Of a DNA stretch of 64,000 nucleotides, positions 46,870 to 63,699 are shown one piece after another; position 1 is the first letter of the stretch, and each line of letters opens with the position of its first letter. The position numbers were made by a program, and so were the translations under genes. The stretch lies in the sequence record LR756504.1; one strand, given 5' to 3'. The notes under the pieces are model-generated. The model ran no database searches, was not told where the DNA came from, and was given only the letters and a program-made list of their open reading frames with translations.

Positions 46870-47160
46870 ATGAAGCACTTTAAACTATTTGAGAATTATA
46901 ATATAGATAAGAATCAATCTGTATACGGATATTGGGATTTAGCAAATGCTTTAGATATTACAAAATTAGTAACCTTTCTTAAAGATAATAATGTAACCTA
47001 CAAATACGATAAATATTCTAATAAATTAGAAATTGAAGTTGAAACTATGGATAAAGACATTCACAGTCTTATACTAACAGAATTAGATAAAATTGAAAGT
47101 GATACAACCGAATCAACAACAGATGATGTTATCTTAATAACTCCTATAAAATATTATTAA
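46870..47160 (+). CDS. MKxxKLFE N-terminal-tag protein
   Basis: MKHFKLFENY; AATATATA just upstream. Confidence 0.75.
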   Translation: MKHFKLFENYNIDKNQSVYGYWDLANALDITKLVTFLKDNNVTYKYDKYSNKLEIEVETMDKDIHSLILTELDKIESDTTESTTDDVILITPIKYY

Positions 47161-47162
47161 TT

Positions 47163-47552
47163 ATGAAGTATTTAAAACTATACGAAAACTTCTCAGAGGA
47201 TTGGGACGATGAAGAACCCGAAGATTGGGATAATGAAGACGAAGAAGAGGAAGAATTCTATGATATGTTTACTACATACAAAGACAAGTTTACTATCATA
47301 AATTTCAAACATTTAATAGAATTATTTAAAAATCATGGTATAAATCTTACCAAAGAAAATTTCTTTATTGATGATGATAGACTACATATTTTTAATAAGC
47401 AGTTAATATTTAATGAATCTATAATTAATATTAGTATTATTTTAAAGAGTTATGATGAAGTAAAAGAATGTGGTTTAACATCAAATAGACATTTCATAAT
47501 CAATTTCTATCATCCTATAAAAATGTTAGAACATTGGTGGGGAAATCTATAG
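47163..47552 (+). CDS. MKxxKLFE N-terminal-tag protein with acidic linker
   Basis: MKYLKLYENFSEDWDDEE. Confidence 0.75.
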   Translation: MKYLKLYENFSEDWDDEEPEDWDNEDEEEEEFYDMFTTYKDKFTIINFKHLIELFKNHGINLTKENFFIDDDRLHIFNKQLIFNESIINISIILKSYDEVKECGLTSNRHFIINFYHPIKMLEHWWGNL

Positions 47553-47561
47553 TTCCGATAT

Positions 47562-47589
47562 AAAGGGAGTTTTTTAAGTTCCCTTTTTT
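47562..47589. terminator. Bidirectional terminator
   Basis: AAAGGGA(G)TT..AAGTTCCCTTTTTT between convergent genes. Confidence 0.7.
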
Positions 47590-47590
47590 A

Positions 47591-47809
47591 TTACTGTAAA
47601 ACTTTCAAATTATAAACATCTTTAATACTTTTACATGGTAAAGGTGTATATATACCATTGGGTTTAGATAAAAGGTGTTCATTTAGCTTATCCATTGCAT
47701 CTTGCTTAGATGTAGCTTTTACGATAGTTTCACCATATTCATATCTATCTGTTACGAAGTATTGATGCATTATTTTATACATTCCTTCTTCTTCTATAAA
47801 TTGTACCAT
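47591..47809 (-). CDS. Hypothetical protein
   Basis: Has its own promoter at 47830. Confidence 0.7.
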   Translation of the reverse strand: MVQFIEEEGMYKIMHQYFVTDRYEYGETIVKATSKQDAMDKLNEHLLSKPNGIYTPLPCKSIKDVYNLKVLQ

Positions 47810-47829
47810 AATGTTTTTGTTTTATAATA

Positions 47830-47861
47830 CAAAGATAAAAAGAATTGTAGTCTAATACAAA
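47830..47861 (-). promoter_or_regulatory. Bacteroidota-type promoter
   Basis: TTTG-N20-TATCTTTG. Confidence 0.85.
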
Positions 47862-47881
47862 CTTTTTTAACATTTTTTCTA

Positions 47882-47889
47882 TATAAATA
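47882..47889 (+). promoter_or_regulatory. T4-late-type TATAAATA element
   Basis: Exact T4 late consensus 4 nt before ATG 47894. Confidence 0.4.
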
Positions 47890-47893
47890 GATT

Positions 47894-48073
47894 ATGGAAG
47901 AAAATGATGATTGGTATGATATTGCCATAAGTATTAAAAGAAATAGAGAAGCGTGGCTTCATCCAGAAATAACATTAGAAAGAAAATTAGTGGAAGAGCT
48001 TACAAAAGAAATTGATAGACAAATTCTACAAGATTTAATGGCTATGGGCGATATGGATATTGAAAATTTATAA
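47894..48073 (+). CDS. 59-aa protein with a gp23-like helix (not in ORF track)
   Basis: Hand translation: ...LERKLVEELTKEIDRQILQDL...DIENL*. Confidence 0.6.
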   Translation: MEENDDWYDIAISIKRNREAWLHPEITLERKLVEELTKEIDRQILQDLMAMGDMDIENL

Positions 48074-48203
48074 AAATTTAATTGGTAGAGATTTAAACTC
48101 TACGACAGGTCTGGGTATCCTTTGTGTACCTGAGTCAAACAGGATATATTATGGTTGATATATGGGTTAGTCTTTTTATTACTACTTCCCTACAATTAAA
48201 TTC

Positions 48204-49002
48204 TTACAAATTATAAAGATTTGGATACTTATCTTTCATTTTTTTAGTCCATTCTAATGCTTCTCTTCTTCTCCGCGTTAAATCTATTTTAGAATACCTT
48301 CTAACAACTGTCAGATTAGTTTTAATTAATACCTTATATGGTACATCACAGTTGGATATAATCCAATGGTAAATGGTTTCATATTTCTTAGGGATAAAGA
48401 ATGAACATACATCTTCATAATTTCGAGAAATATGTATTCCCGTAATTTCTTCAATTTCATCCAAAGCACAATCGTTCGCATCTGTCAAGTAAGTACGATA
48501 CCATTCATCTCTTAACTTACCAGTGATTTGCTCTATCACTAACCATTTGAATTCTATGAAAGCTTTTACTCTATCATAACAATGTTTATTATAAGCTTCA
48601 ATATTTCCCAATTTAAGTTTTTCATCACCACCACATTTCACTTTGATGATGAAATAATCACTACATTTTATCATAAAACAATGTTATTGTATATTTGTTT
48701 TTCTATAGAAATAATTTTTTCGTTTTTCTGTATGTTTAGTAGATATCTTACATTTCTTCATCACGATCACGTTGAGCATCCAATTTAACTTCTTCTTTAA
48801 TAGATTCAATGGCTTCATCCAAAGGTATTACCTTATAATTATTGGATAACATCCACCCGTAGGCGGTTTTCATTTTTTCATTACTTTTAATACATTCAGA
48901 TTCAGCAAGAGTTTTATCAGTGAATATTTCAGAAATATCATAATCACCTTGTCTGAACACTACAAATACTTCTGTATAAGCCGAAAATAATTTCTTTCCC
49001 AT
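48204..49002 (-). other. Two hypothetical CDS (48204-48674, 48748-49002)
   Basis: Operon behind the 49827 promoter. Confidence 0.65.
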
Positions 49003-49220
49003 TATTGTAATGTGTTTATTTTAGATTTTCTATTATTCAATCTACGTAAAAGTTCACTGGATAGGATATCTATCCATTTATCTTTTCCTCCTAAATAATC
49101 AATTGGTATTCTTACGTTCCCAATACCATTAAAACAATCAATAACAGAATTGATGTGTTCATTACTCATTTGAGATACAGGTATATGATTATCGTTTGCA
49201 GTAATCCAAATTGCTCCCAT
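49002..49220 (-). CDS. C-terminal-tag protein
   Basis: Ends NNRKSKINTLQ*. Confidence 0.75.
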   Translation of the reverse strand: MGAIWITANDNHIPVSQMSNEHINSVIDCFNGIGNVRIPIDYLGGKDKWIDILSSELLRRLNNRKSKINTLQ

Positions 49221-49822
49221 TAGTTTTTAGTTTTATTTGAATTGATTCTATCTTGAATTGCTCTATGTAAACCACTTGCATATTTCTTAAAATCATCCAC
49301 ATTGACAGGTTTAATTTCTCTATTAAACCATTCGGATTCAGTCATTTTTTCGAGATTGACAAACTCGTCATGCTTTAAATTACTAACAATATGTTTACTA
49401 TGTGTGATTACCAAAATACCACAATTTACTTCTTTGATTTTTTCATTCAAATATTGAGCTAAACCAACTTGAAGTTCTTCACCTAAGCCAATTTCAGGTT
49501 CATCAATAACAATGAAATCGGGATTCGTTTGTTTGAACACTGAATCAATTGTATGGATAGTATTATCAGAGGTAGCTAACCAATCCAAATCATGACACAT
49601 AGTACTCAATGCACCCATCATAGGATTACTCTTAGTTCTAATTTCTTGGGAAGCTTGTGGAATATGAACTTTCTTTTTATTCAACACTTGCTCAAGATTA
49701 GTGCTCAAAAGCTTTCTAATCAATGATTTACCACTAGCATTTCTACCAGTAAGTATAGTAACCTTATCATGTGAGATTTTGATATTGCTGATATAGTTAA
49801 TATGTTCATCGAAATTTTCCAT
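49220..49822 (-). CDS. Stand-alone ABC-type ATPase (second copy)
   Basis: GRNASGKS, VIDEPEIGLG, ITHS. Confidence 0.85.
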   Translation of the reverse strand: MENFDEHINYISNIKISHDKVTILTGRNASGKSLIRKLLSTNLEQVLNKKKVHIPQASQEIRTKSNPMMGALSTMCHDLDWLATSDNTIHTIDSVFKQTNPDFIVIDEPEIGLGEELQVGLAQYLNEKIKEVNCGILVITHSKHIVSNLKHDEFVNLEKMTESEWFNREIKPVNVDDFKKYASGLHRAIQDRINSNKTKN

Positions 49823-49826
49823 GATA

Positions 49827-49858
49827 CAAAGGTACTAAAACTTGTATGTAAATACAAA
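49827..49858 (-). promoter_or_regulatory. Bacteroidota-type promoter, leaderless
   Basis: TTTG-N20-TACCTTTG-N4-ATG. Confidence 0.88.
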
Positions 49859-49883
49859 TATATATGTAAATATATTTTTAATA

Positions 49884-50531
49884 ATGAAATATTTAAAGAT
49901 TTTCGAAGATTACAACTTTCTTTTCTATCTAAATGAAATTGAAGAAACTTACTTTTCACCATATTCAAAGATAGTTTTAGATACTAATACAGAAGGATAT
50001 ATAATAACTAATAAAATTGCGCATGTTGGTGCTAGAATAGCATTTATTAAGAACTCTACAGAAGCTTTAAGAGATGGCTTATTTCATGAAATGGGACATA
50101 TAGTAATGTTTAAAAATTTAGAAAGATTAAAAATGAGTAATTTTGGATTTGATTATTCAACAAAGGATAATTTAGGTTATAATGTTCCAATATCATGGAA
50201 TGGTATTAAAAATGAATGTAAAGCTATTATATGGCAATCAATTATATGTAAAAAATATGATATTCATTTTAACATTAATGACTTCGTTAAAGCATTAAAA
50301 TATATGGAAGATTTTACAAATGTTCCTTTAAAAGGGTGTTTTAAAAATGAATATAGATGGTATTATAATATAGAATTTACAGAAGAAGTTAATTATAGAG
50401 ATTCAGATAAATTGAGACTTGAAACTATTAAGGATTATGTACATAATGAATCAAATAATAGTGAATATACAATAATTAATTTTGATAAAAGATGGAGCAT
50501 TAGATGTCAGTGGTTAGAAGACAACTTATGA
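49884..50531 (+). CDS. HExxH metallopeptidase-like protein with MKYLKIFE tag
   Basis: MKYLKIFEDY; LFHEMGHIV...KNECKAI. Confidence 0.7.
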   Translation: MKYLKIFEDYNFLFYLNEIEETYFSPYSKIVLDTNTEGYIITNKIAHVGARIAFIKNSTEALRDGLFHEMGHIVMFKNLERLKMSNFGFDYSTKDNLGYNVPISWNGIKNECKAIIWQSIICKKYDIHFNINDFVKALKYMEDFTNVPLKGCFKNEYRWYYNIEFTEEVNYRDSDKLRLETIKDYVHNESNNSEYTIINFDKRWSIRCQWLEDNL

Positions 50532-50570
50532 TATTTTCACAATAATATATAATTAAAAATAACATCAATT

Positions 50571-50753
50571 ATGAAAATAGTAATAATTCAAGTTTTATTA
50601 TTCTTATTGGGAGTAGTATTATTAATCGTAGATGGTAGCGGCGGACATATAGCAAATGCATCATTTATATCGGTATTGGGTATAGTATCTTGTGTGATAG
50701 GTATTGGACTTTCCCAATTATTGGGACTTATAAGTTCATTAAAGAAGAAGTAA
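50571..50753 (+). CDS. Small two-TM protein
   Basis: Hydrophobic; AATATATAA upstream. Confidence 0.6.
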   Translation: MKIVIIQVLLFLLGVVLLIVDGSGGHIANASFISVLGIVSCVIGIGLSQLLGLISSLKKK

Positions 50754-50808
50754 TAAAATGGAGTTTAAACTCCCTTTTATTTTTATATATAGTAAAAATA
50801 GCTATTAT

Positions 50809-51522
50809 ATGGTTTTTAATTTTAACTTACATTCTATACTCGAATCAAAAGAAGCTGATTTTGATAAAGTAATTAAACTTTCTCAAATGAATACTAACAG
50901 AGGAGCTTCCGCTGGCGAAGAAGCAAATGCTATATCTTTAGCAAAGCAATTAGTTAAAAAGAATAATTTCACACGCGAAGATTTTAAAGGTAAAATAGAT
51001 GATGCAATTCTAATTTCAATTTTTGGTAAATTAAAACCATCTGCTAAAAAAGAACATCCATTCGAAAGAGATGAAAGACAATATCAAGAAGATAAATCTA
51101 AGAAAAAAGATTTTATTGATTTAGTAGATGATGAAGGTAAAAAAGTATCATTGAGAAAAATTAAATTAAACTTTGGTGATAAAAATGGTGGTATGTTAGA
51201 TGTATTAATTGAAGATGAATATGATTTATTTGACCAATTTATCAATTCTCCTTTTTATACATTTATGGATTGGGGTAATAATGGTATGCCAACACGCACT
51301 ACAAATTCTCGTATTGATATAGTACATACAAGTTGGTTTGAGCCCGCGGATAAAGGTGCTTTAAGTGCATGGTTTTTTGAAAAAATAACAGGTAAAACTA
51401 TTGGTGGATTTGCATTGTTTCCCACTAAATGGAGATATGATGGTAAAAACTTCACATTCAAAACACCACCTTATCCAATATTATTTATAGTACCAGAAAA
51501 AATTGCAGGAAATTATATGTAA
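50809..51522 (+). CDS. Protein with DUF2786-like N-terminal helices
   Basis: KVIKLSQMNTNRGASAGEEANAISLAKQLVKK; start after the TATATA element. Confidence 0.5.
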   Translation: MVFNFNLHSILESKEADFDKVIKLSQMNTNRGASAGEEANAISLAKQLVKKNNFTREDFKGKIDDAILISIFGKLKPSAKKEHPFERDERQYQEDKSKKKDFIDLVDDEGKKVSLRKIKLNFGDKNGGMLDVLIEDEYDLFDQFINSPFYTFMDWGNNGMPTRTTNSRIDIVHTSWFEPADKGALSAWFFEKITGKTIGGFALFPTKWRYDGKNFTFKTPPYPILFIVPEKIAGNYM

Positions 51523-51526
51523 TATT

Positions 51527-51556
51527 AAAAATGGAGTTTTTAGACTCCTTTTTTAT
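51527..51556. terminator. Bidirectional terminator
   Basis: GGAGT-TTTTAG-ACTCC flanked by A- and T-runs between convergent genes. Confidence 0.7.
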
Positions 51557-52495
51557 TTTTATAAATTTTATTCCAATCAGATACTACAGCATTCCAATCG
51601 GATATTAATGCATCTTTATCAGACTTAAAAATATCACTGCTATTTATATCCATATCTTCATATGTATTATAATTACCCACTATATTAAATATAGAACCCA
51701 TTCCCTTAAAGAAATTGGATATAAAGCTTTTAAATTTCATATTAATATTTTTATTCAAATAATTCACAATCATTTTTATTTATTTTAAAAAAGCTACTCT
51801 TAATTTCCACACTTTAACTTTAAAACTGTTTCTTGAAATGTCTTGAATAATTCAGGCTCATCATCAAAATATTTTAAATAGGTATCTTCCAACTCCATAT
51901 CATCGAGAGCCTTCATAATATAATCACCAACATCATCAGAAAGTAAATCATATATTTTATCTATGATCTCATCAAAGTTACTATCTGTAACATCTTTATA
52001 TTCTCTACCTGTAGAAAAATAACTACCTATCTCTATCTTATTTCTTCCTGAATAATATAAATTATACACAGATTCAGCAGAATAAATTGTTTTCATAGGT
52101 ACATGATATAATGTTATCATACCATTAATACTTCTAACACTTAAAATGGCATCTCTTAATTTGTCTTTTGTTATATTCATATCTTATTTGAAACCTGTTC
52201 TTTTTAGATTCATTATTTGTTTATCACTTATATCAAAAAAAGTTATTTTTAATTTTATTCCAAATCGTTTTATAATATGTCTAATATAGGGTTCTAAGAA
52301 ACTATTTTCTTTATTTTTAATTATAATATAAAGTATATAAACTTTTTCACCTCTTATAAAATCATATGAAAAAACATCATATCCTTTATCAATAATCTCT
52401 ATCCCATCAATAGAAAATTTAGATATTAGACTTTTTGATGTCTTTTCTGCCTTATTGGTTTTTTGAAGTAAAGATACTCTATAATATTTATACAT
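51540..52495 (-). other. Three hypothetical CDS (51540-51773, 51800-52180, 52184-52495)
   Basis: Packed minus-strand ORFs. Confidence 0.65.
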
Positions 52496-52686
52496 TATAA
52501 ATTCAATTTTTCGATTCTTTCTTTTCTTGTTTCTATTTTGGTATCATCAAATTCTAACATACCCAATTGTAAATATTCTTTAATTTCTTTTATACTAATC
52601 ATATGCATTGGAAATGATTCTATTTCACTAGTTATAGCATTTATTGTATAAATTCTACCATCATTACGTAAATAATATTTTTTCAT
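52495..52686 (-). CDS. C-terminal-tag protein
   Basis: Ends ETRKERIEKLNL*. Confidence 0.75.
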   Translation of the reverse strand: MKKYYLRNDGRIYTINAITSEIESFPMHMISIKEIKEYLQLGMLEFDDTKIETRKERIEKLNL

Positions 52687-52688
52687 AA

Positions 52689-53126
52689 TTAATTAAGATG
52701 TCTATTATCTTTGTGTTCTCCTTTAGGTGCATTATTATGTGTCCATAATCTCGCAAAAGGTGTTGTGAAATTATTATTGTAAATCTGTGTATCGTCTATA
52801 TGTAGAGTAATTTCATGATCTCTACAATAGTCTCCTTTAGTTCTATCCCATACATCATCATCAATTTTAGGGATATTGAATTTTACATGATGTCCAATTA
52901 TTTCAGTGCCAATTTCTCTATGGTAATCAAAAATAGAGAAACTATGTGTAAATGGAATATCCAGTTCTTTTAACTTATCAATACACAAAGGTGTCCAAGT
53001 CATACCAGTAATGATATGTACTTCACCACCTTGTGCAATTACAGCTTTAGCTAAAAACGAAATGATTTCTGGTACAGCATCTAATACACCGTGCCAATCA
53101 ATTCCAAGTTTAAAAGATTTGTTCAT
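52689..53126 (-). CDS. HAD-superfamily hydrolase-like protein
   Basis: LGIDWHGVLD (motif I variant), IITG, HIDDT. Confidence 0.7.
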   Translation of the reverse strand: MNKSFKLGIDWHGVLDAVPEIISFLAKAVIAQGGEVHIITGMTWTPLCIDKLKELDIPFTHSFSIFDYHREIGTEIIGHHVKFNIPKIDDDVWDRTKGDYCRDHEITLHIDDTQIYNNNFTTPFARLWTHNNAPKGEHKDNRHLN

Positions 53127-53294
53127 ATTATCTACGATTATATCTTCTTCTTTTTGGTGTTGATAAATTTTCGTCTATTTTATAATATTTACTATTACCA
53201 CTAAATAGTGATTCATATTCAGCTTTTTCGATGTTAGCTAATTCTTCATCAATTGTTCCATTCTCTCTTAATGGGTAACCTTTATTATTTCTTA

Positions 53295-54222
53295 CTACTG
53301 ACATATGCTATTAATTTTACGTTCTAAATATACAATTTTTAATTTAGTACAAGTTATTCCATGTCCTAAACAATCAGATGAATATTTGCTCCACATATTC
53401 TCAAAATTAACCAACTCTGCTTTTAAGTATGTAATTGCTTTTTCAATTGAACCATGTTCTTTCACATCGTTTTCGGCTCTTTCAACTACTTTGTATTTTT
53501 TTTCTTGTTCAGACATAACTAAATTTTTAAACCTATCATTCCTTTACATGGAGATTTTCTATTATTATGACACTCCATAAACTCTATATTCAAATTATTT
53601 TTTACTTTTTTAAGGCCATTGAGTTTAGCTTCAATAGCTTTTTGATTATTTATAGAAGATGCTGTTGAAAACGGACAGCCCGTACATGGTTTATTTTTCA
53701 TTGTTAAGGATTTTGTATTTCCCATTCAGCAATTAATTTATCAATATCAAATATTATTGTATGGTAATATAGCATTTTCTCAGAAGTTTCTAAAGTGAGA
53801 ATCGTATCATTTGTATTGATAAAATATTCTCTCATTATTTCTAATAATACTTCAGGTGTATCGGTGTTCATTTTTTTACAAACTAATTCTCTACATTCTG
53901 TTATTTCCATGAATTCAATTACATCATCAATAATTAATATTTCATTTCCCAACTCCCATGGTTTACTTTCATCACTAATTTTAGAAGAAATTGATATTAA
54001 TTCTTCTTTAAAGTTTTTTAAAATCATTATAAAAATTGGATCCGAATCATGTACTTTATCTGGTAAATTATCTAAAATTAAACACAATAAATTCTTCCTA
54101 ATATCAGAATCTAATGCTTTCATTTCTTCTATAATATCCATACCTTCTTGATATGTTATTGTATCATTTTTAAAATGCTCTTTAATTCTTTCTTCTAACA
54201 TATTTTTAAATTTGTGTTCCAA
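53295..54222 (-). other. Three CDS (53295-53516, 53519-53725 Cys-rich, 53704-54222 with a 41575-like domain)
   Basis: Operon behind the 54781 promoter. Confidence 0.65.
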
Positions 54223-54816: not shown

Positions 54817-55101
54817 TTATAAATTATTTAAATTGTCTATTTTAGACTTTCTTTCAGATAAAATATCAACTTTATCAAAAAGTCTTGGGTTTATTCCACT
54901 TATTTCACTATGATCAATATCTTCGAATCTTAAAAAACTAACACCAAAACTATAAGGTGTTATTGATTTTATAATGAGAACTTTATCACGTAATGTATCA
55001 GCTATGCGTTTAGATGATTCTCGACTTATATCACCAATTCTACTTTCAATTAATATTACTTTATCACCAATATTAAACTTACACTGATTGTACATCATCA
55101 T
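54817..55101 (-). CDS. KOW-like tagged protein
   Basis: FNIGDKVIL; ends SERKSKIDNLNNL*. Confidence 0.8.
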   Translation of the reverse strand: MMMYNQCKFNIGDKVILIESRIGDISRESSKRIADTLRDKVLIIKSITPYSFGVSFLRFEDIDHSEISGINPRLFDKVDILSERKSKIDNLNNL

Positions 55102-55601: not shown

Positions 55602-55994
55602 TTAGTATAATTTTTCTATTCGAGATTTTCTATCTAACACTTCAACTGATAATAAATAAGAAAAAGTAATAAGTGATGGTTTACCATCACTTATATCAGG
55701 TGAAGTGAATTTGAAATATGATCTATTCGTAAGCTCTTCTATATATCCATTATATTCATTAATTACTGTTGAATTTCTTCTGTTTTGTGTTTTTATTTTA
55801 ATTAATGTATTAGACGTAATATTTCTTAATAAGGTATAAGCTTCTATTCGAAATGCAACATCTTCTTTATAAAGTTTATTATTCTCGGCTATTAATTCTA
55901 AATTTTCTGTTTGACCATCCAAATATTCAGCGTATAGCATCATAGTTATACACTCTTTTCTGATTCTTATATTTTTGTTTAATTCAACTTTCAT
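55602..55994 (-). CDS. C-terminal-tag protein
   Basis: Ends LDRKSRIEKLY*. Confidence 0.8.
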   Translation of the reverse strand: MKVELNKNIRIRKECITMMLYAEYLDGQTENLELIAENNKLYKEDVAFRIEAYTLLRNITSNTLIKIKTQNRRNSTVINEYNGYIEELTNRSYFKFTSPDISDGKPSLITFSYLLSVEVLDRKSRIEKLY

Positions 55995-56516: not shown

Positions 56517-56539
56517 TTTAAATTAAAAATGTTCACAAA

Positions 56540-56571
56540 TTTGTATGTTTGTAAAATTTTACTTAAATTCG
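56540..56571 (+). promoter_or_regulatory. Bacteroidota-type promoter variant (divergent)
   Basis: TTTG-N20-TAAATTCG. Confidence 0.5.
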
Positions 56572-56716
56572 CCAAATTATTTAAAATATTATAAGAATAA
56601 TACAACTAAGGTATCTAAAAGAGGTGATGTTAGAATGAATTTATCAGAGATTATTGAAGGTGGTGATATAGATGCTCAATTAAAAAAATCAATAGAAAAA
56701 ATAATTAGTAAATAAA

Positions 56717-56748
56717 TTTGTATTTTTCTACAATATTTATTACCTTTG
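56717..56748 (+). promoter_or_regulatory. Bacteroidota-type promoter
   Basis: TTTG-N20-TACCTTTG. Confidence 0.88.
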
Positions 56749-56778
56749 TAATATTAATCAATTAAACAACCTAAAACT

Positions 56779-57267: not shown

Positions 57268-57270
57268 TCT

Positions 57271-57456
57271 ATGAGAAATAACTTTGTTTATTATAGTCCA
57301 TTGATACCAATTATTGGTATGTTGATTGTTATATTCGTACCCGTATATACAAAATTATGTATTACCGATGATACACTTTATAAAAAATCTAAACTGATTC
57401 AAAGATTATCTTCAATAATTCTTGGAATTATATCCATATCATATGTGCTATGGTAG
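57271..57456 (+). CDS. Small two-TM protein
   Basis: Hydrophobic. Confidence 0.55.
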   Translation: MRNNFVYYSPLIPIIGMLIVIFVPVYTKLCITDDTLYKKSKLIQRLSSIILGIISISYVLW

Positions 57457-57479
57457 AAAAAATTAAATCATATAATTTA

Positions 57480-58004
57480 ATGAGAGCGTTATATTTTATA
57501 TTATTATTTTTTATATTATCTAATGCTTATTCACAAGATTCGACATTTAAAGTTAAATCATCTTATTATAGTAGAATTCAAAGTTTAACTTATGATGGGG
57601 TTGGTAGTAATAGACATTTACAAATAATAGAAGGTGGTAAATCATTTTCAGTTTTGGATATAGGAATCGCAATTGCGTATAGAGGTGGAGACTCTTTGAT
57701 AATTATGCCTAAACTTACTTTGGATGCTTCACAGTACCAATATTTAAGCAACGAGTACTCAATTGGATTTGGATATTATTACAACAGTCAGACACCTATG
57801 GTATTTGATATTTCGAGTACTATATTAGCACAAGTACATAAAAAAATAGCAATCGGTATAAGTGCTGGCTTTAGTGATTATAGTGGAGATGCTATAAATT
57901 ATACAAAAAACTATATCGGGTTTATTGTTAGAATAGGTTTATTAAGAGACTTTAATGGAATGTTAACTAAAACAACTAGAATGAGATTTAATCATCATCG
58001 ATAG
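57480..58004 (+). CDS. Exported beta-rich protein, possible outer-membrane beta-barrel
   Basis: Signal MRALYFILLFFILSNAYSQ; alternating strands YSIGFGYYY, IAIGISAGF, YIGFIVRIG. Confidence 0.5.
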   Translation: MRALYFILLFFILSNAYSQDSTFKVKSSYYSRIQSLTYDGVGSNRHLQIIEGGKSFSVLDIGIAIAYRGGDSLIIMPKLTLDASQYQYLSNEYSIGFGYYYNSQTPMVFDISSTILAQVHKKIAIGISAGFSDYSGDAINYTKNYIGFIVRIGLLRDFNGMLTKTTRMRFNHHR

Positions 58005-58020
58005 TCTTAGTATATTTTTA

Positions 58021-58540
58021 TTATTTAGCTATTTCCCAATCATTTTTTTCATCATCCCAATGACGATTGTCATATGTATAGAATATAAAAGACTGTCCCA
58101 ATATAGTCAAATCAAAATTAAATCCTGCATGATCACTTCTTCTTGTCCAACATAAATCAAATGAAAATATATTCCCCAATAAATTTAAATGTATTCCAAA
58201 CCATTTATTATCAGTCAATAAACGAACATTTAAATCAAACATTTGGTATACATTCAATTTATTCGGAAGCCATTGTAAACAGAATGATTTATTCTTACAC
58301 CACTTAATAGGTTTCTCTATAAAATACATATTATAATATTTTTAATTCATCAACTTCGAATATATCACTACCTATAAAATTTCCCTTTATAGTAACCATT
58401 TTTCCTTCTAATTTATGTAATGGTTCGTCGTTCTTTCTCAATTTCATTTTCAACCAACCCAATACTATGAAAGCTTCTTCCTGTTCATTTTTAGAACCTT
58501 TGTCGAATATATCAACGACTACTTTTCCACTAATTTCCAT
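58021..58540 (-). other. Two hypothetical CDS (58021-58329, 58331-58540)
   Basis: Packed ORFs. Confidence 0.65.
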
Positions 58541-59006
58541 ATATTTTATCTATTCTTGATTTTCTATCTTGTTTAATTTCTTTTTCTCTTATTGGCATGT
58601 GCCAATCTAATTTTCTATCATTATCAAGAAATATAGTAATATAATACTTTAATTCATTATGGAATTCTATTTCTCTTATTACTGCTTTCACGTCTATTGA
58701 ATTATTTATTTTTGTTGTTATCACATCACCAACTTTAAACTTAGAGTTATCAATTATATATTGATTTCTCTGATTTTTTTCTATTTGTTTTAATTTTTTG
58801 CTATACGGAATATCTAATAATACTAATGGTCCAGTAAGAATAAATATTAAATTCCACCCTCCTACAATATTAGTTTTATTTAAATATTTAGAAAAATATG
58901 TTTTGTGTTCTTTTATTTCAATAATACTTTTCATACCAATAATTATCCACAAACAAAAACCCGTTGTAGAAATAATTATCAATAAAGCTTCCATTGTAGC
59001 ATCCAT
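58530..59006 (-). CDS. Two TMs plus a KOW-like domain plus C-terminal tag
   Basis: KFKVGDVITT; ends QDRKSRIDKIYGN*. Confidence 0.8.
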   Translation of the reverse strand: MDATMEALLIIISTTGFCLWIIIGMKSIIEIKEHKTYFSKYLNKTNIVGGWNLIFILTGPLVLLDIPYSKKLKQIEKNQRNQYIIDNSKFKVGDVITTKINNSIDVKAVIREIEFHNELKYYITIFLDNDRKLDWHMPIREKEIKQDRKSRIDKIYGN

Positions 59007-59064
59007 ATTAATTATATGTTCTCAAATACTATTTGTTTTATTTGTATTGAATTAAAATAGAAAA

Positions 59065-59665
59065 TTATGGACAATATGAGTTTTTCAATGGACGAAATTC
59101 TTTTGGTAATTCTTCGAATGTTATAATATTATAATCAAGCTCACCACCATTATAATTTCTATCTACAATAAATATTGTTTTCGCTTGTTTTAAAATTTCT
59201 AAATAGATAATAGCTTTAGATAGAAAATCTGATATTTGTGCTTTAGTTGATAACACATGGATGAATCTGACAAACTCTTGTTCAACATCATCTAATAATA
59301 TAACACCAAGCACTACTGTACCATACTTATTTGTTCCATAATAAATAACATCATTTTCACCATCATTAGAAACAACAGTATAATCACTTACAATTTCATG
59401 TAAGTGTGGTATTAGATGTTTATGTTTTGCGACAATAAACATATTACTTTTTTAATGATAATAGTTTATTAATTGTATTAGACAATTCTTCGTCCAATTC
59501 AGCATCTAACCAATAACTACCATTGTTACCATCTCTAATATTAATATCCCATTTTTTACAAATTTGTTTCAATCTTAAATCATTCAATTTAACATTATGA
59601 ATTTCTAAGCCATTAACATAAGATGTAAAATCTTCTCTATATAATTTGTATAATTTTTCGTTCAT
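59065..59665 (-). other. Two hypothetical CDS (59065-59442, 59444-59665)
   Basis: Packed ORFs. Confidence 0.65.
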
Positions 59666-59926
59666 TTTAATTTTTATGTGTTAAATATCCAATAGAAAAA
59701 TAAACATAATACAATCATTATCGGAAATAATGCTAACATCCATGCCAACAACCACTTAGATGTATTTAATATTTTTTTAATCATAACCTTTTATATTTTA
59801 TTTGTAATATTAAGCAATTTAATTTATCACTTTCTGATAAATTATTATTTATTTCATTTATAATATAATTAGTTATTTTTTCATGTAATACTAACTTCTT
59901 TGCTAACTTTTCAAATGTATTCATAA

Positions 59927-60286
59927 TTATGATATAGAATTTTCTATAATTTTAGTTCTATATTCTTTGAGTGATAAGGAAGTTTTACTATTGAATTTTA
60001 TAGTAACTCTATTTCCATTAATAGAAATTTCATCAACATCATAATGATATACCCAAGCATCAGATGAACGATTTTCCATGTATAATTCTTTACTATCTCT
60101 TATTCTATTCCATATTTTAATATCAATAATATCAAATTTGGCACAACCATTTTTTGAAAAATATGTTGTATTATCTTTAAATTTAACTTTACCAAAAGAA
60201 AAAGTAAATTCTAAAGCTGCTTCCCATACTATGTTCTTATATTCTTTAATACTTATCATAATTGTAATTTTAACATCTATAGCCAA
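59927..60286 (-). CDS. C-terminal-tag protein
   Basis: Ends LKEYRTKIIENSIS*. Confidence 0.75.
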   Translation of the reverse strand: MAIDVKITIMISIKEYKNIVWEAALEFTFSFGKVKFKDNTTYFSKNGCAKFDIIDIKIWNRIRDSKELYMENRSSDAWVYHYDVDEISINGNRVTIKFNSKTSLSLKEYRTKIIENSIS

Positions 60287-61355
60287 GTACCGTACCTTCT
60301 ACCATTTCTTTCACTCCTTTCAGGCATATCAATTTCACGCACCTTACTTTTAAATATATTTAAATAATAGTCATTTAATCCTTTCTTAAAAATTCTTGAT
60401 AGTTTTAATGATTCTTCGCTTGTTAAATCTATTGTAAATTCTTTATATTTTAAATAACATCTAACATTTTCTACAGTAGTATAATACAACTGTGGATAAA
60501 ATTCTCTATGAATATCATCAGCAAAATAATAATAATCATTATTTTGAATATATTTACTAATGGTATTACTACCACATAATCTATTAAACCAATCCTTTAA
60601 ATATCTCTCAGGTGTTTCTGGTTCAGGTTGTGTTGGTAATATAGGCGTTAATATATTTTCTGTATTGATAGCTTCTTCAATTTCATCCAAATCATCATCA
60701 TTTAAAAAAGTAAAATCTTCTTCTACGGTTGGATCAAAATCTGTGAAATCGTCATAAATATCACCATCATTATCAATAACTTCTGATGTAAAATTACTAC
60801 CATTTATATGCGAATCAACCTTCGGTGTAACTAATCTACCCTCCATATACAAATCTGATTTTGGAATAGGCGGGATGGTATGTTTTTTTACTAAATTAAT
60901 TAATTTTCTCATAATATTATTTCTTTATATGTAAATTTCAAATCATTTATTTTATTAGTAAAAATATTTAAATAATAATCATTAATACCTTTATTAAATA
61001 TAGCTATTAAATTATCCATTTCTGTTCTATTAAGAGAAACTTTAAATTCTTTAAAGCTTAATTTAGTGTATGTAATTGATAATATGGGATAATTATTTGA
61101 TTCAACATTATTTTCACCAAAATAATAAGTCGTTGTACCACAACTATATTTATTTATATTCAAATCATTACATAATATAATAAACCATTCTTTTATTAAT
61201 ATTTCTGGTGTTGGCGGTAATGGTAATTGAGGAGTTAATGTATTTTGTTCTTCTTCCATTTCTATTTCTTCAATATCATCAGAATTTAAAAATATTGATT
61301 CCATTACATTCTGTTTCATATTATTTTCAATATTTTTGGATTTAAAAAACATCAT
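60277..61355 (-). other. Tandem paralog pair (60277-60912, 60909-61355)
   Basis: Shared D..EIE..E...LTP.LP..P..PE..(L/I)K.WF..LC...I.KY..YYF. Confidence 0.75.
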
Positions 61356-61372
61356 AACTCTACAATTTAAAC

Positions 61373-61401
61373 ATTATAGATAAATTAATGATGAAAGTTT
61401 T
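61373..61401 (-). promoter_or_regulatory. Class II promoter AAAACT-N17-TATAAT
   Basis: Exact match on the minus strand, upstream of 61355. Confidence 0.6.
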
Positions 61402-61425
61402 AAAATGAATATTTTTTTATAAAAA

Positions 61426-61457
61426 TTTGTTTTTTTCTTCAGTTATGCGTATATTTG
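61426..61457 (+). promoter_or_regulatory. Bacteroidota-type promoter
   Basis: TTTG-N20-TATATTTG, ATG at 61464. Confidence 0.8.
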
Positions 61458-61463
61458 TCATAT

Positions 61464-61733
61464 ATGAAGAGAAAATACAGAATCAAACACATCATAAAAA
61501 AAGGTAATACATGCTATATTCCACAAATTAGGAAGTTTTTTATGTGGTTTGATATACAAGCAGAAGGAATGTTTGGTATGTATGACGTTTATTTTAATAA
61601 CCAAGAAGATGCTAAAGATTGGATTAAAAAAGACATCGAACATCGAAAAAAGATGGCAGATAATAGAACAATTGAGTGTATTCCATTTCATACAAGAACA
61701 GAAAGAATTCAAAATCTAATTGATAAAAAATGA
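61464..61733 (+). CDS. C-terminal-tag protein
   Basis: Ends HTRTERIQNLIDKK*. Confidence 0.75.
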   Translation: MKRKYRIKHIIKKGNTCYIPQIRKFFMWFDIQAEGMFGMYDVYFNNQEDAKDWIKKDIEHRKKMADNRTIECIPFHTRTERIQNLIDKK

Positions 61734-61871
61734 TTCTTATTAAAGAAACAAAATATCAAGATGGTATCATGAAAGTCTATGAAGTAAAAACGCAATGCTT
61801 TATTCCCGAACATGGTAAAAAAGATATGAAAGAAAGTATATGTATTGAACACATCTTTATATTTGAAAAAT

Positions 61872-62141
61872 ATGAATCTATCTGAATTATTTGATAAATT
61901 AAAAATTGGAGATATTCTAATTATAGAAAAACTACCCAGTCTTTGGTCAAATGCTGCTGGTGGAAAATGTGGTATGAATGTTATTAAATATCCATACCAT
62001 TTTACTATAGAATCCATAGTACTAAGTAGAATCTCAATTCATATTGCAATAAAAGATACAAATGGATATGGTTGGTCAATTAATGATGAAAATATAAAAT
62101 TGTTTACACACATAAACAGAGTTAATAGAATAAAAATTTAA
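61872..62141 (+). CDS. YPYT/DTNGYGW family protein with tag truncated by a 1-nt deletion
   Basis: IGDILII..WSNAAGG..KYPYHFTI..HIAIKDTNGYGWSI; ends RVNRIKI*. Confidence 0.8.
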   Translation: MNLSELFDKLKIGDILIIEKLPSLWSNAAGGKCGMNVIKYPYHFTIESIVLSRISIHIAIKDTNGYGWSINDENIKLFTHINRVNRIKI

Positions 62142-62148
62142 ACCTATA

Positions 62149-62433
62149 ATGGAATACAACGATTTTAAAAAATTAAATGTAGGTGATAATATCACAATTA
62201 AAGAAAATCCAATTTCTTGGACATCCCACAATTATGGTAGATGTGGAACTGATAGAGTAAAGTATCCGTATACATTTACCATCGTTAAATTTGCATATTT
62301 GAAAGGATTTTTTAATCATATTTCTATTATATGTCAAAACGGTTATGGTTGGTCAATTGAAGTGTCTAATTATGAAAAATTTGAAATTAATAAAAAAAGC
62401 AGAAGAAGTAGAATCGAAAATTTGAATATATGA
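62149..62433 (+). CDS. YPYT/NGYGW family tagged protein
   Basis: Ends KSRRSRIENLNI*. Confidence 0.85.
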   Translation: MEYNDFKKLNVGDNITIKENPISWTSHNYGRCGTDRVKYPYTFTIVKFAYLKGFFNHISIICQNGYGWSIEVSNYEKFEINKKSRRSRIENLNI

Positions 62434-62672
62434 AAATTGAAATTGGTGATGTAATGATTTGTTTACCAGGATTTACTAATAACATTAGTAACTCTAACTA
62501 TGGTGGTGCTGGGTATACAGAAAATAAAATATTTACCGTAGGGAGCATTACAGGTAACGGTAGAGTTATATGGGCTAATGATGAAAGTGGTAAAGGTGTT
62601 TACAGTTATACATTAAAACATTATACTAATAGAAAATCAAGAATTGAAAAATTACACAATGAAAATTTATAA
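62430..62672 (+). CDS. KOW-like tagged protein
   Basis: IGDVMIC; ends TNRKSRIEKLHNENL*. Confidence 0.8.
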   Translation: MKIEIGDVMICLPGFTNNISNSNYGGAGYTENKIFTVGSITGNGRVIWANDESGKGVYSYTLKHYTNRKSRIEKLHNENL

Positions 62673-62692
62673 TAATAAATAAAATACCATTT

Positions 62693-63121
62693 TTATATTA
62701 TATGATATTCTAAATAATTATGTTTCTCTATATACTCTTGTGGTGATTTATATTTTTCGGGGAAACCTTTCGACCTATCCCAACTTGGTTTTAGCATATC
62801 TATTGCATACATAGCCCTAGCAATTGTTGGCTCATATGTAGAACCTAAACCAAAACCAGTTCCCCATTTAGATGATGGTTTATGTACAGATGCGAATCTG
62901 AACTCACCATAACGATCATAATCAACTTTACCAATTTTATTATCCTTAGTAAATAAAAACCATGTCGATGGTTCTTCTGGTACTATAATATCAAATCCAT
63001 TTGATTTTAGCAGTTTTGCATATTGATTTAATGCTTCGGATGTAGAGTAAATTTCATCTTCCTCTTCTTCTTCCTCATCCCAATCTTCCGAGAAATCTTC
63101 AAACAATTTTAAGTATTTCAT
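62693..63121 (-). CDS. MKYLKLFE N-terminal-tag protein with acidic linker
   Basis: MKYLKLFEDFSEDWDEEEEEE, near-identical to the 47163 N-terminus. Confidence 0.8.
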   Translation of the reverse strand: MKYLKLFEDFSEDWDEEEEEEDEIYSTSEALNQYAKLLKSNGFDIIVPEEPSTWFLFTKDNKIGKVDYDRYGEFRFASVHKPSSKWGTGFGLGSTYEPTIARAMYAIDMLKPSWDRSKGFPEKYKSPQEYIEKHNYLEYHII

Positions 63122-63124
63122 GAA

Positions 63125-63141
63125 CTATATATAATATATAC
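63125..63141. promoter_or_regulatory. TATATA-rich bidirectional element between divergent genes
   Basis: CTATATATAATATATAC in a 23-nt gap between two ATGs. Confidence 0.45.
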
Positions 63142-63144
63142 TTT

Positions 63145-63699
63145 ATGAATTTCTACTCAAATTTCGATGATTTTCTATTAGAGAAAAATGGATTTACACA
63201 CAATGTATTATTATATAAATTAAATATTCCTGGATGGGAAAATATTATAAACAGTATTGATAAAGAAGATATTTGGAAAATAGAGAATACAGAATTACCT
63301 GGTATACCAGGTGGTTATCAATTGTATCCACATGTTACTTTATTGTATAATTTAAGAAATACAAATATAAACAAAATTGGTTCATTAATAAGCACCTTAG
63401 AACCTATTAAATTTGAAATTAATGGTATAAATATATTTAGAACATCTAAGGGATACGATGTATTAAAAATGTCTGTTAAACCAACCGAAGAACTTCTTTA
63501 TATACATCAAATATTTAAGGATATTTTTCATACAAATTCTAATGATGATTATACACCACATATTACAATAGCATACTTAAAAGAAGGTACTGCTCTAAAA
63601 TATGTTGATTATGAATATAAAAATATTATTTATTCCGATACTATCATATACAGTCTAAAAAGTGGTTATCAACTCGAATTTAAAATTGATGCTAAATAA
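63145..63699 (+). CDS. 2H phosphoesterase, Acb1 (T4 gp57B)-like
   Basis: Two HxT motifs, YPHVTLLY and DDYTPHITIAY; the second closely resembles DDYTPHITLSY of T4 Acb1 as recalled. Confidence 0.8.
   Translation: MNFYSNFDDFLLEKNGFTHNVLLYKLNIPGWENIINSIDKEDIWKIENTELPGIPGGYQLYPHVTLLYNLRNTNINKIGSLISTLEPIKFEINGINIFRTSKGYDVLKMSVKPTEELLYIHQIFKDIFHTNSNDDYTPHITIAYLKEGTALKYVDYEYKNIIYSDTIIYSLKSGYQLEFKIDAK

What the first reader, a model, noticed from the sequence alone, without database searches (positions are those of the whole stretch)
46870..63699. Second tag system: N-terminal MKYLKLFE motif on genes behind TATATA-type promoters
Seen: 46870 (MKHFKLFEN), 47163 (MKYLKLYENFSEDWDDEE), 49884 (MKYLKIFED) and 62693 (MKYLKLFEDFSEDWDEEE), more loosely 63145 (MNFYSNFDDFLLE) and 50809 (MVFNFNLHSILE). 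Downstream domains are unrelated. Each gene or operon is preceded by a TATATA-rich element rather than a class I/II promoter, and none carries the C-terminal tag. Established: T4 internal proteins share a short N-terminal capsid-targeting sequence (MKTYQEFIAE) removed by the prohead protease after Glu. Inference: late-made cargo proteins packaged in the head and injected, so the phage would have two mutually exclusive address labels.
Basis: partly seen in the sequence, partly recalled or inferred. Interest (0 to 1): 0.66.

Follow-up and report, generated by a model that had tools for sequence, protein, structure and literature searches.

The report
Head-targeting tags on huge-phage proteins
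About 55 unrelated, late-promoter-driven proteins of a 636-kb uncultured phage start with a short peptide that closely resembles phage T4's capsid-targeting sequence and the phage's own scaffold repeats, so they are probably cargo loaded into the head and injected with the DNA; packaging itself has not been shown.

Summary
The window is bases 1-64000 of LR756504.1, a 636-kb uncultured phage.

- **The tag.** Across the genome, 38 proteins begin with M-K-[YH]-[LI]-K-x-[FY]-[EN]-x-[FY]. Another 17 begin with the heptad [FYW]xx[FYW][LIVM]xE. That is about 55 of 928 genes, and after the tag they fall into about 52 unrelated families.
- **Level of conservation.** Conservation is in the peptide, not the RNA.
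- **Promoter link.** 38 of the 55 have their own TATATA box (odds ratio 9, p 2e-14), and most of the rest lie directly behind such a gene. The same box precedes the capsid, portal, sheath, head-closure and baseplate genes. The phage also encodes a T4 gp55-like late sigma factor.
- **Head module.** It is T4-type: a gp23-family capsid protein and a gp21-like protease fused to a scaffold with eleven Y-S-E-Y-[LIV]-A-E repeats.
- **Match to T4.** The tag's two aromatic residues correspond to the residues that target T4 IPIII (MKTYQEFIAE) to the capsid.
- **Distribution.** The motif is common in related huge phages and nearly absent from 596 Gb of prokaryote genomes.

Best reading is a T4-type capsid-targeting propeptide on late cargo proteins (confidence about 0.6). 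Packaging, cleavage and injection are untested. The "two mutually exclusive labels" claim has no statistical support.

The parts
46860..46865 (+). TATATA box (context AATATATAC) ending 4 nt before the ATG at 46870; late-promoter-like, near-leaderless spacing
46870..47160 (+). Tagged gene, 96 aa, MKHFKLFENY...; no known family
47163..47552 (+). Tagged gene, 129 aa, MKYLKLYENF followed by an acidic linker (SEDWDDEEPEDWDNEDEEEEE). It starts 2 nt after the previous gene, so it lies in the same TATATA-driven unit.
49859..49864 (+). TATATA box starting 25 nt before the ATG at 49884 (long-leader class)
49884..50531 (+). Tagged gene, 215 aa, MKYLKIFEDY... It contains an HExxH motif (FHEMGH). There are weak leads to metallopeptidase folds only.
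50786..51522 (+). TATATA box (50786-50791) plus an ORF read from the ATG at 50809 (MVFNFNLHSILE...). Doubtful, divergent tag.
62693..63121 (-). Tagged gene, 142 aa, start codon at 63121: MKYLKLFEDF plus acidic linker. The shared fold with viral clusters begins at about residue 26.
63122..63144 (.). 23-bp divergent intergenic region. TATATA boxes at 63126-63133 serve the minus-strand gene; the box at 63135-63140 serves the plus-strand gene.
63145..63699 (+). Tagged gene, 184 aa, MNFYSNFDDFLLE... (flavour Ar-x-x-Ar-L-x-E). It is a 2H phosphoesterase matching the Acb1 family. The tag is a detached low-confidence helix ahead of the fold.

Best explanation
**What it is.** The motif is a T4-type capsid-targeting sequence (CTS). 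It is a short amphipathic N-terminal helix with an invariant Lys and two aromatic residues three positions apart.

**How it is proposed to work.**
- The helix docks newly made proteins onto the scaffold core of the assembling prohead.
- The scaffold is fused to the gp21-like prohead protease. It carries eleven 14-residue repeats (Y-S-E-Y-[LIV]-A-E) that look like the tag.
- The tagged genes are transcribed with the structural genes from TATATA promoters, probably read by the phage's gp55-like sigma factor.
- After shell assembly the protease would cut the scaffold at its [LIV]-A-E sites. It would also cut at least those tags that carry a [LIV]-x-E site (residue 8, or residues 11-14), freeing the cargo inside the head.
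- The cargo, mostly small proteins and including an Acb1-family 2H phosphoesterase, would then leave with the DNA at infection.

**Shown here.** The motif, its peptide-level conservation, its link to the TATATA class, the T4-type head genes, and the sequence resemblances.

**Inferred.** Docking, cleavage, packaging and ejection.
For: **Head module.**
- gp23-family capsid protein (PF07068, 77 bits).
- The next gene upstream is a gp21-like protease: PF03420 24.7 bits; BLASTP against T4 gp21 9e-5, with the HP and SSR motifs aligned.
- The protease is fused to 11 Y-S-E/N-Y-[LIV]-A-E repeats. The same fusion occurs in 9 relatives, and a fused protease-scaffold gene is annotated in phage PTm1.
- Portal, head closure, sheath, large terminase and a gp55-like late sigma factor are present.

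**Tag against T4.**
- Tag logo: Lys at -2 in 36/38, aromatic at 0 in 38/38, E/N/D at +1 in 38/38, aromatic at +3 in 34/38.
- T4 IPII and IPIII begin MKTYQEFIAE; IPI begins MKTFKEFTST.
- In T4, residues 4 and 7 (Y, F) determine targeting, residues 8 and 10 determine processing, and gp21 cuts after L/I-x-E (PMC9026906).
- 26 N-termini carry the full heptad [FYW]xx[FYW][LIVM]xE, against 4.3 expected.
- T4's CTS scores 20.0 against a profile of this phage's scaffold repeats. Only one of about 900 N-termini of this phage scores higher. Tagged N-termini score above the rest (p 5e-4).

**Late class.** 38/55 tagged genes have their own TATATA box, against 168/873 others (p 2e-14).

**Add-on module.**
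- Cargo domains are unrelated.
- Acidic linkers follow the tag.
- In the AF2 model, residues 1-17 have pLDDT below 50 ahead of a confident 2H fold.
- The fold shared with viral clusters starts at residue 26 in the 62693-63121 protein.

**Peptide level.** Synonymous codon use in the tags matches the genome. The distance of the motif from the ATG varies.

**Clade-specific.**
- At least 106 exact DNA matches in IMG/VR, against 1 in 596 Gb of prokaryote genomes.
- 16-51 strict matches per related huge genome, against 0-1 for the reversed-pattern control.
- 15 of 44 motif-bearing contigs hold a gp23 gene. Summed completeness predicts 15.5 (my sum of the table).
Against: - There are no virion, expression or cleavage data for this uncultured phage.
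- The protease match is below Pfam's cut-off (24.7 against 27 bits).
- 15 of 38 MKYLK-type tags have no [LIV]-x-E within 14 residues. Where one is present it is often L-F-E at residue 8, inside the tag, which has no precedent in T4.
- The MKYLKLFE flavour scores only modestly against the scaffold-repeat profile.
- TATATA also precedes a DNA helicase and a DNA polymerase fragment, so "late" is not clean.
- The cultured relative PTm1 shows no comparable tag family in the half of its genome that I read, so no proteome can be borrowed.
- Two motif-rich contigs (G005, G008) show no gp23 or protease gene. Completeness estimates are unreliable here, however: this genome's own "100% complete" record lacks them too.
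Confidence: 0.6

Rival explanations
1. The tag is a docking helix for some other phage or host hub. Examples are a chaperone, a tail or baseplate assembly factor, a membrane, or a replication compartment. It would mark late proteins for a destination other than the head interior.
For: - The tag is an amphipathic helix detached from the cargo fold.
- The MKYLKLFE flavour matches the scaffold repeats only modestly.
- 15 of 38 tags lack a nearby [LIV]-x-E site.
Against: - The closest sequence parallels are specifically the T4 CTS and this phage's own scaffold repeats.
- The tag has no hydrophobic stretch of the kind used for secretion or membrane insertion.
- The tag co-occurs with gp23-type head modules.
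Confidence: 0.17
2. The shared start is a recombination or ancestry remnant. A promoter-plus-first-codons cassette has been copied in front of many genes by illegitimate or short-homology recombination. It is kept because it supplies a working late promoter and start, not because the peptide does anything.
For: - Tagged genes often lie in tandem arrays, for example nine at roughly 400-800 bp spacing in LR756502 (11122-15640) and five in G003.
- The tag and TATATA travel together.
Against: - Ten tagged genes lack their own promoter yet keep the tag.
- Synonymous sites are free while the amino acids are held.
- Substitutions are conservative (F/Y, L/I, E/N/D), and the motif shifts relative to the ATG.
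- The motif persists across genomes whose capsid proteins are only 48-52% identical. The 735-kb sister keeps the core but not the MKY prefix.
Confidence: 0.1
3. The conservation is at the RNA level. The first 30 nt would be an initiation context needed for translating leaderless or short-leader late mRNAs.
For: 14 of 38 tagged genes have TATATA only 4-7 nt before the ATG, so their mRNAs would start at or near the start codon.
Against: - Third-position usage in the tags equals or is looser than the genome average (AAA 76% against 85%; TAT 68% against 85%).
- Most genes of the same near-leaderless class have other N-termini (68 of 82).
- Tagged genes inside operons and with long leaders keep the motif.
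- The DNA motif is virtually absent from 596 Gb of prokaryote genomes, which include the likely host phylum.
Confidence: 0.05

Closest known systems
T4 capsid targeting sequence of internal proteins IPI, IPII and IPIII (Mullaney and Black 1996; reviewed in PMC9026906, PMC3012670)
   Same: - A peptide of about 10-20 residues at the very N-terminus, on otherwise unrelated small proteins.
- Lys followed by two aromatic residues three apart. These are the targeting determinants in T4.
- In 26 proteins, a following [LIV]-x-E like T4's I-A-E.
- A phage with a gp23-type shell, a gp21-type protease and a repeat-rich scaffold.
- Genes driven from a -10-like, AT-rich late element, with a gp55-like sigma factor present.
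   Different: - About 55 carriers instead of 3 or 4.
- Most carry a three-residue prefix (M-K-Y/H) and E/N at +1.
- Two flavours exist, and many tags have no obvious cleavage site, or have Asp at the T4 Glu position.
- The protease and scaffold are one polypeptide.
- Nothing has been shown experimentally.
Long propeptides of head and ejection proteins in phiKZ, 201phi2-1 and SPN3US giant phages (PMC5694885, PMC10052503)
   Same: - Giant phages with many internal head proteins.
- These proteins are processed by a gp21-related protease after Glu.
- Paralogous cargo shares conserved N-termini that are thought to target it to the head.
   Different: - Their propeptides are 80-130 residues long and their cleavage motif is S/A-x-E.
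- No short universal tag is known there.
- This phage belongs to a different clade, related to the 634-735 kb phages, Lak phages and Tenacibaculum phage PTm1.
T4 prohead core proteins gp67 and gp68
   Same: They have a helical N-terminus with [LI]-x-E sites followed by a very acidic run (gp67...EGEEPEDEDEDEDDEDSDD). This resembles the five MKYLKLYE[DN]FS[DE]xWD[DE]E proteins.
   Different: No sequence homology was detected. gp67 and gp68 are scaffold components rather than cargo, and their N-termini lack the Lys and aromatic-pair motif.

Membership tests
T4-type capsid targeting sequence (CTS) cargo | Short peptide at the extreme N-terminus, shared by proteins whose mature parts are unrelated | tested here: met
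   The motif sits within 0-15 codons of the preceding stop. There are 38 carriers plus 17 more. No BLASTP pairs among the 38, and 3 pairs among the 55, after trimming the tag.
T4-type capsid targeting sequence (CTS) cargo | Aromatic residues at the positions equivalent to IPIII residues 4 and 7, the targeting determinants | tested here: met
   Aromatic at position 0 in 38/38 and at +3 in 34/38; Lys at -2 in 36/38. T4 sequences come; the determinants come from PMC9026906.
T4-type capsid targeting sequence (CTS) cargo | A prohead-protease site (L/I-x-E in T4) ending the tag | tested here: inconclusive
   - 26 proteins have Ar-x-x-Ar-[LIVM]-x-E.
- 23 of 38 MKYLK-type tags have [LIV]-x-E within 14 residues, against 20% of other proteins.
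- 15 of the 38 have none, and 7 have Asp at +6.
- The real specificity of this protease is unknown.
T4-type capsid targeting sequence (CTS) cargo | The phage encodes a gp21-family prohead protease, a scaffold core and a gp23-family shell | tested here: met
   - PF07068: 77 bits.
- PF03420: 24.7 bits, below the 27-bit cut-off.
- BLASTP against T4 gp21: 9e-5, with the His and Ser motifs aligned.
- Scaffold repeats are in the same ORF.
T4-type capsid targeting sequence (CTS) cargo | Made while heads assemble (late, or early plus late) | tested here: inconclusive
   The promoter class is shared with the capsid, portal, sheath, head-closure and baseplate genes, and a gp55-like sigma factor is present. 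There are no transcript data, and TATATA also precedes a helicase and a DNA polymerase fragment.
T4-type capsid targeting sequence (CTS) cargo | Protein found inside the head, tag removed, and ejected into the host | not testable with these tools
   The phage is uncultured.
Sec/Tat or lipoprotein signal peptide | Hydrophobic core of 10 or more residues after a basic N-region | tested here: not met
   Tags are amphipathic and are followed by polar or acidic residues.
T4-type late promoter (gp55-dependent, -10-like box only) | An AT-rich box upstream of structural genes, and a gp55 homologue in the genome | tested here: met
   - The consensus tAATATATA lies before the capsid, portal, sheath, head-closure and baseplate wedge genes.
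- phrog_234 late sigma factor, E 8e-10.
- Genes without the box are enriched for TAnnTTTG-like words.
- Start sites were not measured.

The most novel reading that the evidence does not exclude
Huge phages of this clade use an expanded, modular address system. A scaffold-mimicking N-terminal helix lets about 6% of the proteome, roughly 50 unrelated proteins, be loaded into the capsid and injected ahead of gene expression as a pre-made counter-defence kit. This includes cyclic-nucleotide-degrading (Acb1-type) and protease-like enzymes. The tag would then allow the injected proteome of uncultured phages to be read directly from sequence.
Probability: 0.35. Interest if true: 0.8.

Novelty: new variant of a known kind. 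Interest (0 to 1): 0.62.

Why it matters
**Predicting injected cargo.** If the tag is a capsid address, it gives a sequence-only way to list the injected proteins of the largest known phages, which cannot yet be grown. It would also point to candidate anti-defence effectors that act before any phage gene is expressed. One here is an Acb1-family 2H phosphoesterase.

**How the CTS works.** T4's capsid-targeting mechanism would become a much older and more widely used system. The likeness of the tag to the scaffold repeats suggests how a CTS docks, namely by imitating a scaffold unit. This is unresolved even in T4.

**Practical use.** It would supply a portable packaging tag for Bacteroidota phages.

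**Search results.** I found no paper describing this in a full-text search for the motif strings or for "capsid targeting sequence", nor in a jumbo-phage review.

Tried and rejected
- The scaffold repeats with a tagged N-terminus could not be run, because the scaffold gene lies outside the window. I did not send that protein to any other folding or prediction tool afterwards.
- **Protease missed at first.** The first search for the T4 protease family in G000 was empty. G000 turned out to be only 348 kb of the 636-kb genome. The head genes lie in the other part.
- **Covariation test in PTm1 uninformative.** Its scaffold has different repeats (FTKELSEGIEKW). The 117 kb I read shows no abundant N-terminal family, only three starts of the type KLYxxI[ST]E.
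- **Homologue searches.**
  - The protein at 62693-63121 returned only itself.
  - Pfam and PHROGs gave nothing for nearly all tagged proteins.
- **Cultured phages.** A 39-nt BLAST of the tag against cultured phages gave only weak, noisy hits.
- **The 735-kb sister.** It first looked like a counter-example, with 0 strict matches. A gapped pattern showed it uses the short form M-[ILV]-K-x-F-D/E-x-F (25 hits against 8 for the control).
- **"Mutually exclusive labels" rejected.** Zero overlap is what chance predicts.
- **Not used.** The reads tools were not used. No genetic code other than table 11 was needed. There are no N stretches in the genome.


Full report
**Where the window lies.**
The window is AT-rich (about 25% GC) and reads well in the standard code. 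It is identical to bases 1-64000 of LR756504.1, an unannotated 636,363-bp "uncultured phage". The genome supplied as G000 (347,857 bp, flagged by IMG/VR as complete with inverted terminal repeats) is only a part of that record. G000 1-257964 equals LR 378400-636363, and G000 257965-347857 equals LR 1-89893. The "terminal repeat" is a 123-bp inverted repeat. I rebuilt the whole 636 kb from fetched tiles. I then called 928 genes crudely, taking the longest ATG ORFs with greedy removal of overlaps (91% coverage). By capsid protein, the nearest relatives are the 634-, 642- and 735-kb uncultured phages (48-52% identity). After those come a 462-kb phage, the Prevotella Lak phages, Tenacibaculum phages PTm1, PTm5 and pT24, Chryseobacterium and Flavobacterium phages, Sphingomonas phage PAU and T4-like cyanophages.

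**The observation.**
The four strong cases and one loose case are present in the window. One correction is needed. The gene quoted at 62693 is on the minus strand and starts at 63121.

Genome-wide, 38 proteins start with the motif. Aligned on the first aromatic residue, the logo is as follows:
- M at -6 and K at -5
- Y/H at -4
- L/I at -3
- K at -2 (36/38)
- F/Y at 0 (38/38)
- E/N/D at +1 (38/38)
- N/D/E at +2
- F/Y at +3 (34/38)
- E/D at +6 (20/38)

Three counts show this is far beyond chance:
- The core occurs in the first 16 residues of 33 proteins, against 1.3 expected from its internal frequency.
- A degenerate DNA version (ATGAARYAYHTNAARNNNTWYRAN) has 25 matches in 636 kb, all 25 at called gene starts.
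- After removing the first 16 residues, no two of the 38 proteins are similar by BLASTP at E < 1e-3.

The start at 50809 is doubtful. It has a TATATA box 23 nt upstream but lacks the Lys and the i/i+3 aromatic pair.

**Peptide or RNA?**
- Synonymous codon use inside the tags matches the genome, or is slightly richer in the rare codon: AAA 76% against 85%, TAT 68% against 85%, TTT 80% against 78%.
- Substitutions are conservative at the protein level.
- The motif moves relative to the ATG, as in MIKNFEEF, MSIKKFNEF, MKSKYLKTYENY and MKFLKDYKLFESY.
- The exact DNA motif ATGAARTAYTTAAARTTATTTGAR has at least 106 matches in IMG/VR, always at the start of an ORF and with many different continuations. 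It has a single match in 596 Gb of bacterial and archaeal genomes.

The constraint is therefore on the peptide, and it is a phage trait. It is not a general start context of AT-rich cells.

**Promoters.**
TATATA (consensus tAATATATA) piles up at two distances from start codons. The box starts 8-15 nt before the ATG at 82 genes, and 21-33 nt before it at 124 genes.
- Of the 38 tagged genes, 28 have their own box, against 178 of 890 others (odds ratio 11, p 6e-12).
- Seven of the other ten lie 26 nt or less behind a same-strand gene that has one.
- The same box precedes the capsid, portal, tail sheath, head-closure and baseplate wedge genes.
- The genome encodes a protein matching the T4 gp55 late sigma family (phrog_234, E 8e-10).
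- Genes without the box are enriched for TAnnTTTG-like words, which from general knowledge is the Bacteroidota housekeeping -7 element.

It is not clean, because a DNA helicase and a DNA polymerase fragment also have the box, and no transcripts were examined.

**The head module is T4-like.**
- At LR 183.6-185.3 kb lies a gp23-family capsid protein (PF07068, 77 bits).
- The gene immediately upstream encodes a 712-residue protein. Its first 200 or so residues match the T4 prohead protease. The PF03420 score is 24.7 bits, just under the 27-bit cut-off. BLASTP against T4 gp21 gives 9e-5 over 159 residues, with GEFDHP aligned to GELNHP and VSSRAAG to VSSRGLG.
- The rest of that protein is a scaffold-like region with eleven tandem 14-residue repeats, Y-[STG]-[EN]-Y-[LIV]-A-E-x-L-D-K-x-I-x.
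- The same fusion, with 10-14 such repeats, stands next to the capsid gene in five IMG/VR relatives and in the 634-, 642- and 735-kb genomes. PTm1 has an annotated "prohead core scaffolding protein and protease" in the same place, with different repeats.
- The capsid protein has a conserved I-x-E-N site about 45 residues before the start of the shell fold (HQIHE-N here; HSINE-N in relatives; TINE-N in PTm1). T4 gp23 reads FLTE-AEIGG at the corresponding place. That this is the gp23 maturation site is from my memory of the T4 literature, not from a tool.

**Comparison with the T4 tag.**
From the T4 record, IPII and IPIII begin MKTYQEFIAE and IPI begins MKTFKEFTST. According to PMC9026906:
- The first ten residues of IPIII suffice for packaging.
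- Targeting depends mainly on residues 4 and 7 (Tyr, Phe).
- Processing depends on residues 8 and 10 (Ile, Glu).
- Asp at position 10 blocks processing but not targeting.
- gp21 cuts after L/I-x-E.

Put in register, T4's K-T-Y-Q-E-F-I-A-E lies on this phage's K-x-[FY]-[EN]-[NDE]-[FY]-x-x-[ED]. The Lys and both aromatic residues are the near-invariant positions of the tag.

I then searched for the full T4-like heptad [FYW]xx[FYW][LIVM]xE near N-termini. It found 26 proteins against 4.3 expected (P about 1e-12), typically F-N-D-F-L-N-E starting at residue 5-7. Seventeen of these were not in the first list, which brings the total to about 55 proteins, 6% of genes. It is also enriched for TATATA (10/17 against 168/873, p 4e-4). 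For all 55 the figure is 38/55 (p 2e-14). Only three pairs of the 55 are related beyond the tag.

I also built a simple profile from the eleven scaffold repeats. It ranks tagged N-termini above the others (p 5e-4). It gives the T4 IPIII tag a score of 20.0, which only one N-terminus of this phage exceeds. The MKYLKLFE flavour scores lower, because it lacks the [LIV]-A-E half.

**Cleavage sites.**
23 of 38 tags have [LIV]-x-E within 14 residues, against 20% of other proteins. This is partly built into the motif. The site is either L/I-[FY]-E at residues 6-8 (12 tags) or [LIV]-x-E at residues 9-14. Fifteen tags have none nearby. Uniform removal "after Glu" is therefore not supported. Some tags may be targeted but not cut, as T4's D10 mutant is.

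**The tag is an add-on.**
- Several tags are followed by long acidic linkers. These resemble the acidic run in the T4 core protein gp67.
- The protein at 63145-63699 is a 2H phosphoesterase. It matches PF13563 (41.8 bits) and the Acb1 family PF23474 (29.6 bits, cut-off 27).
- Its AF2 model has a confident 2H fold from residue 20, and a low-confidence detached helix at residues 6-12, which is the tag. Foldseek returns Usb1, CPDase, LigT, a poxvirus cGAMP phosphodiesterase and phage Acb1.
- Of its three metagenomic homologues, one keeps NFDDF and one has YSDF at the start; the shortest lacks that region.
- For the protein at 62693-63121, the fold shared with viral clusters starts at residue 26.
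- Other cargo hints: a UPF0227 hydrolase match, and an HExxH protein with weak metallopeptidase leads only.
- Median length of the 55 proteins is 151 residues, and 46 of 55 are under 300. This is similar to the T4 internal proteins (95-193 residues).

**Distribution.**
Strict-pattern matches, with reversed-pattern controls of 0-1 throughout:

| Genome | Strict matches |
|---|---|
| IMG/VR relatives of 276-676 kb (five) | 24, 25, 23, 16, 28 |
| 634-kb genome | 47 |
| 642-kb genome | 51 |
| 462-kb genome | 11 |
| 735-kb genome | 0 |
| Lak-B5 | 0 |

- The 735-kb genome, with the same scaffold repeats, instead uses the short form M-[ILV]-K-x-[FY]-[DEN]-x-[FY] (25 hits against 8 for the control). 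This is even closer to T4's layout.
- Of 44 motif-bearing IMG/VR contigs of at least 40 kb, 15 contain a gp23-family gene. The sum of their CheckV completeness estimates predicts 15.5 if all were pieces of gp23-type phages. That is my arithmetic on the table.
- Two motif-rich contigs (G005, G008) show neither the capsid nor the protease gene. Completeness estimates are plainly unreliable for this clade.

**Verdict.**
The motif is a real, portable N-terminal module on late-class genes of a T4-core huge phage. It matches the T4 capsid-targeting sequence at the positions that matter in T4, and it resembles the phage's own scaffold repeats. The most likely function is head targeting of cargo, with cleavage for a subset (confidence about 0.6). 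The rivals are:
- a docking helix for another destination (0.17)
- a copied promoter-start cassette without peptide function (0.10)
- an RNA-level start context (0.05)

The C-terminal RKSRI-x-x-L tail exists on 19 small proteins, 18 of which lack TATATA. Its zero overlap with the N-tag is what chance predicts (P = 0.45), and I have no evidence on what it does. This is a new variant of a known kind. I found no description of it in the searched literature.

Noticed in passing
whole genome; G000 ends = LR756504.1 89771-89893 and 378400-378522: The IMG/VR record called complete with inverted terminal repeats is a 348-kb piece of the 636-kb genome. The "repeat" is a 123-bp inverted repeat flanking the missing 288 kb, which holds the head genes.
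   Followed up: partly
window 52495-52686, 54817-55101, 55602-55994, 58530-59006, 61464-61733, 62149-62433, 62430-62672, 63705-64142 and elsewhere: 19 small proteins end in [RK]-[KS]-[SRE]-[RK]-I-[EDQ]-x-L plus 0-8 residues. 18 of the 19 lack a TATATA box, so they belong to another promoter class than the N-tagged genes. Their function was not examined.
   Followed up: partly
genome-wide; in the window 46860, 47880, 63126-63140: At 82 genes the TATATA box starts 8-15 nt before the ATG, typically ending only 4-7 nt before it. These late mRNAs would therefore be leaderless or nearly so. At 124 genes the box starts 21-33 nt upstream and is followed by an A-rich stretch.
   Followed up: partly
upstream regions of genes without TATATA, genome-wide: Words such as TATTTGTA, CTTTGTA and AAACTTT are 5-8 fold enriched. 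This fits host-type Bacteroidota promoters (TAnnTTTG) for the non-late genes, and a Bacteroidota host.
   Followed up: no
LR756504.1 185342-187480 (-), outside the window (L119): The prohead protease and scaffold are one 712-residue protein with eleven 14-residue Y-S-E-Y-[LIV]-A-E repeats. This is conserved in nine related huge phages.
   Followed up: yes
T4 AF158101 73952-74410 (gene 57B) and 73591-73878 (ipI); locus L135: T4 Acb1 (gp57B) begins MMEFKDFSTG, much like the neighbouring internal protein IPI (MKTFKEFTST). The Acb1-family protein in this window also carries an aromatic-pair tag. I did not check whether T4 Acb1 is packaged.
   Followed up: no
window 63122-63144: Two tagged genes diverge from a 23-bp spacer made almost entirely of overlapping, palindromic TATATA boxes, one set for each direction.
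   Followed up: partly
LR756502.1 11122-15640; G003 412133-413876; G004 378526-380570: In relatives, tagged genes often stand in tandem arrays of 4-9 genes at roughly 400-800 bp spacing. This looks like the fast-changing internal-protein loci of T-even phages.
   Followed up: no
LR756504.1 about 187410-188899 (+), locus L119 1853-3340: A long opposite-strand ORF (496+ aa) sits between the portal and protease genes. It may be a homing-endonuclease-type insertion in the head module.
   Followed up: no
window 45260-45937 and 45948-46619 (-): Two adjacent paralogue-like genes start MKLKLHTQFEEVLNWM and MKFNVNPLFEETFNWV. The second has a TATATA box at -24. This may be a further, looser N-terminal variant (F-E-E-x-[FL]-N-W).
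   Followed up: no
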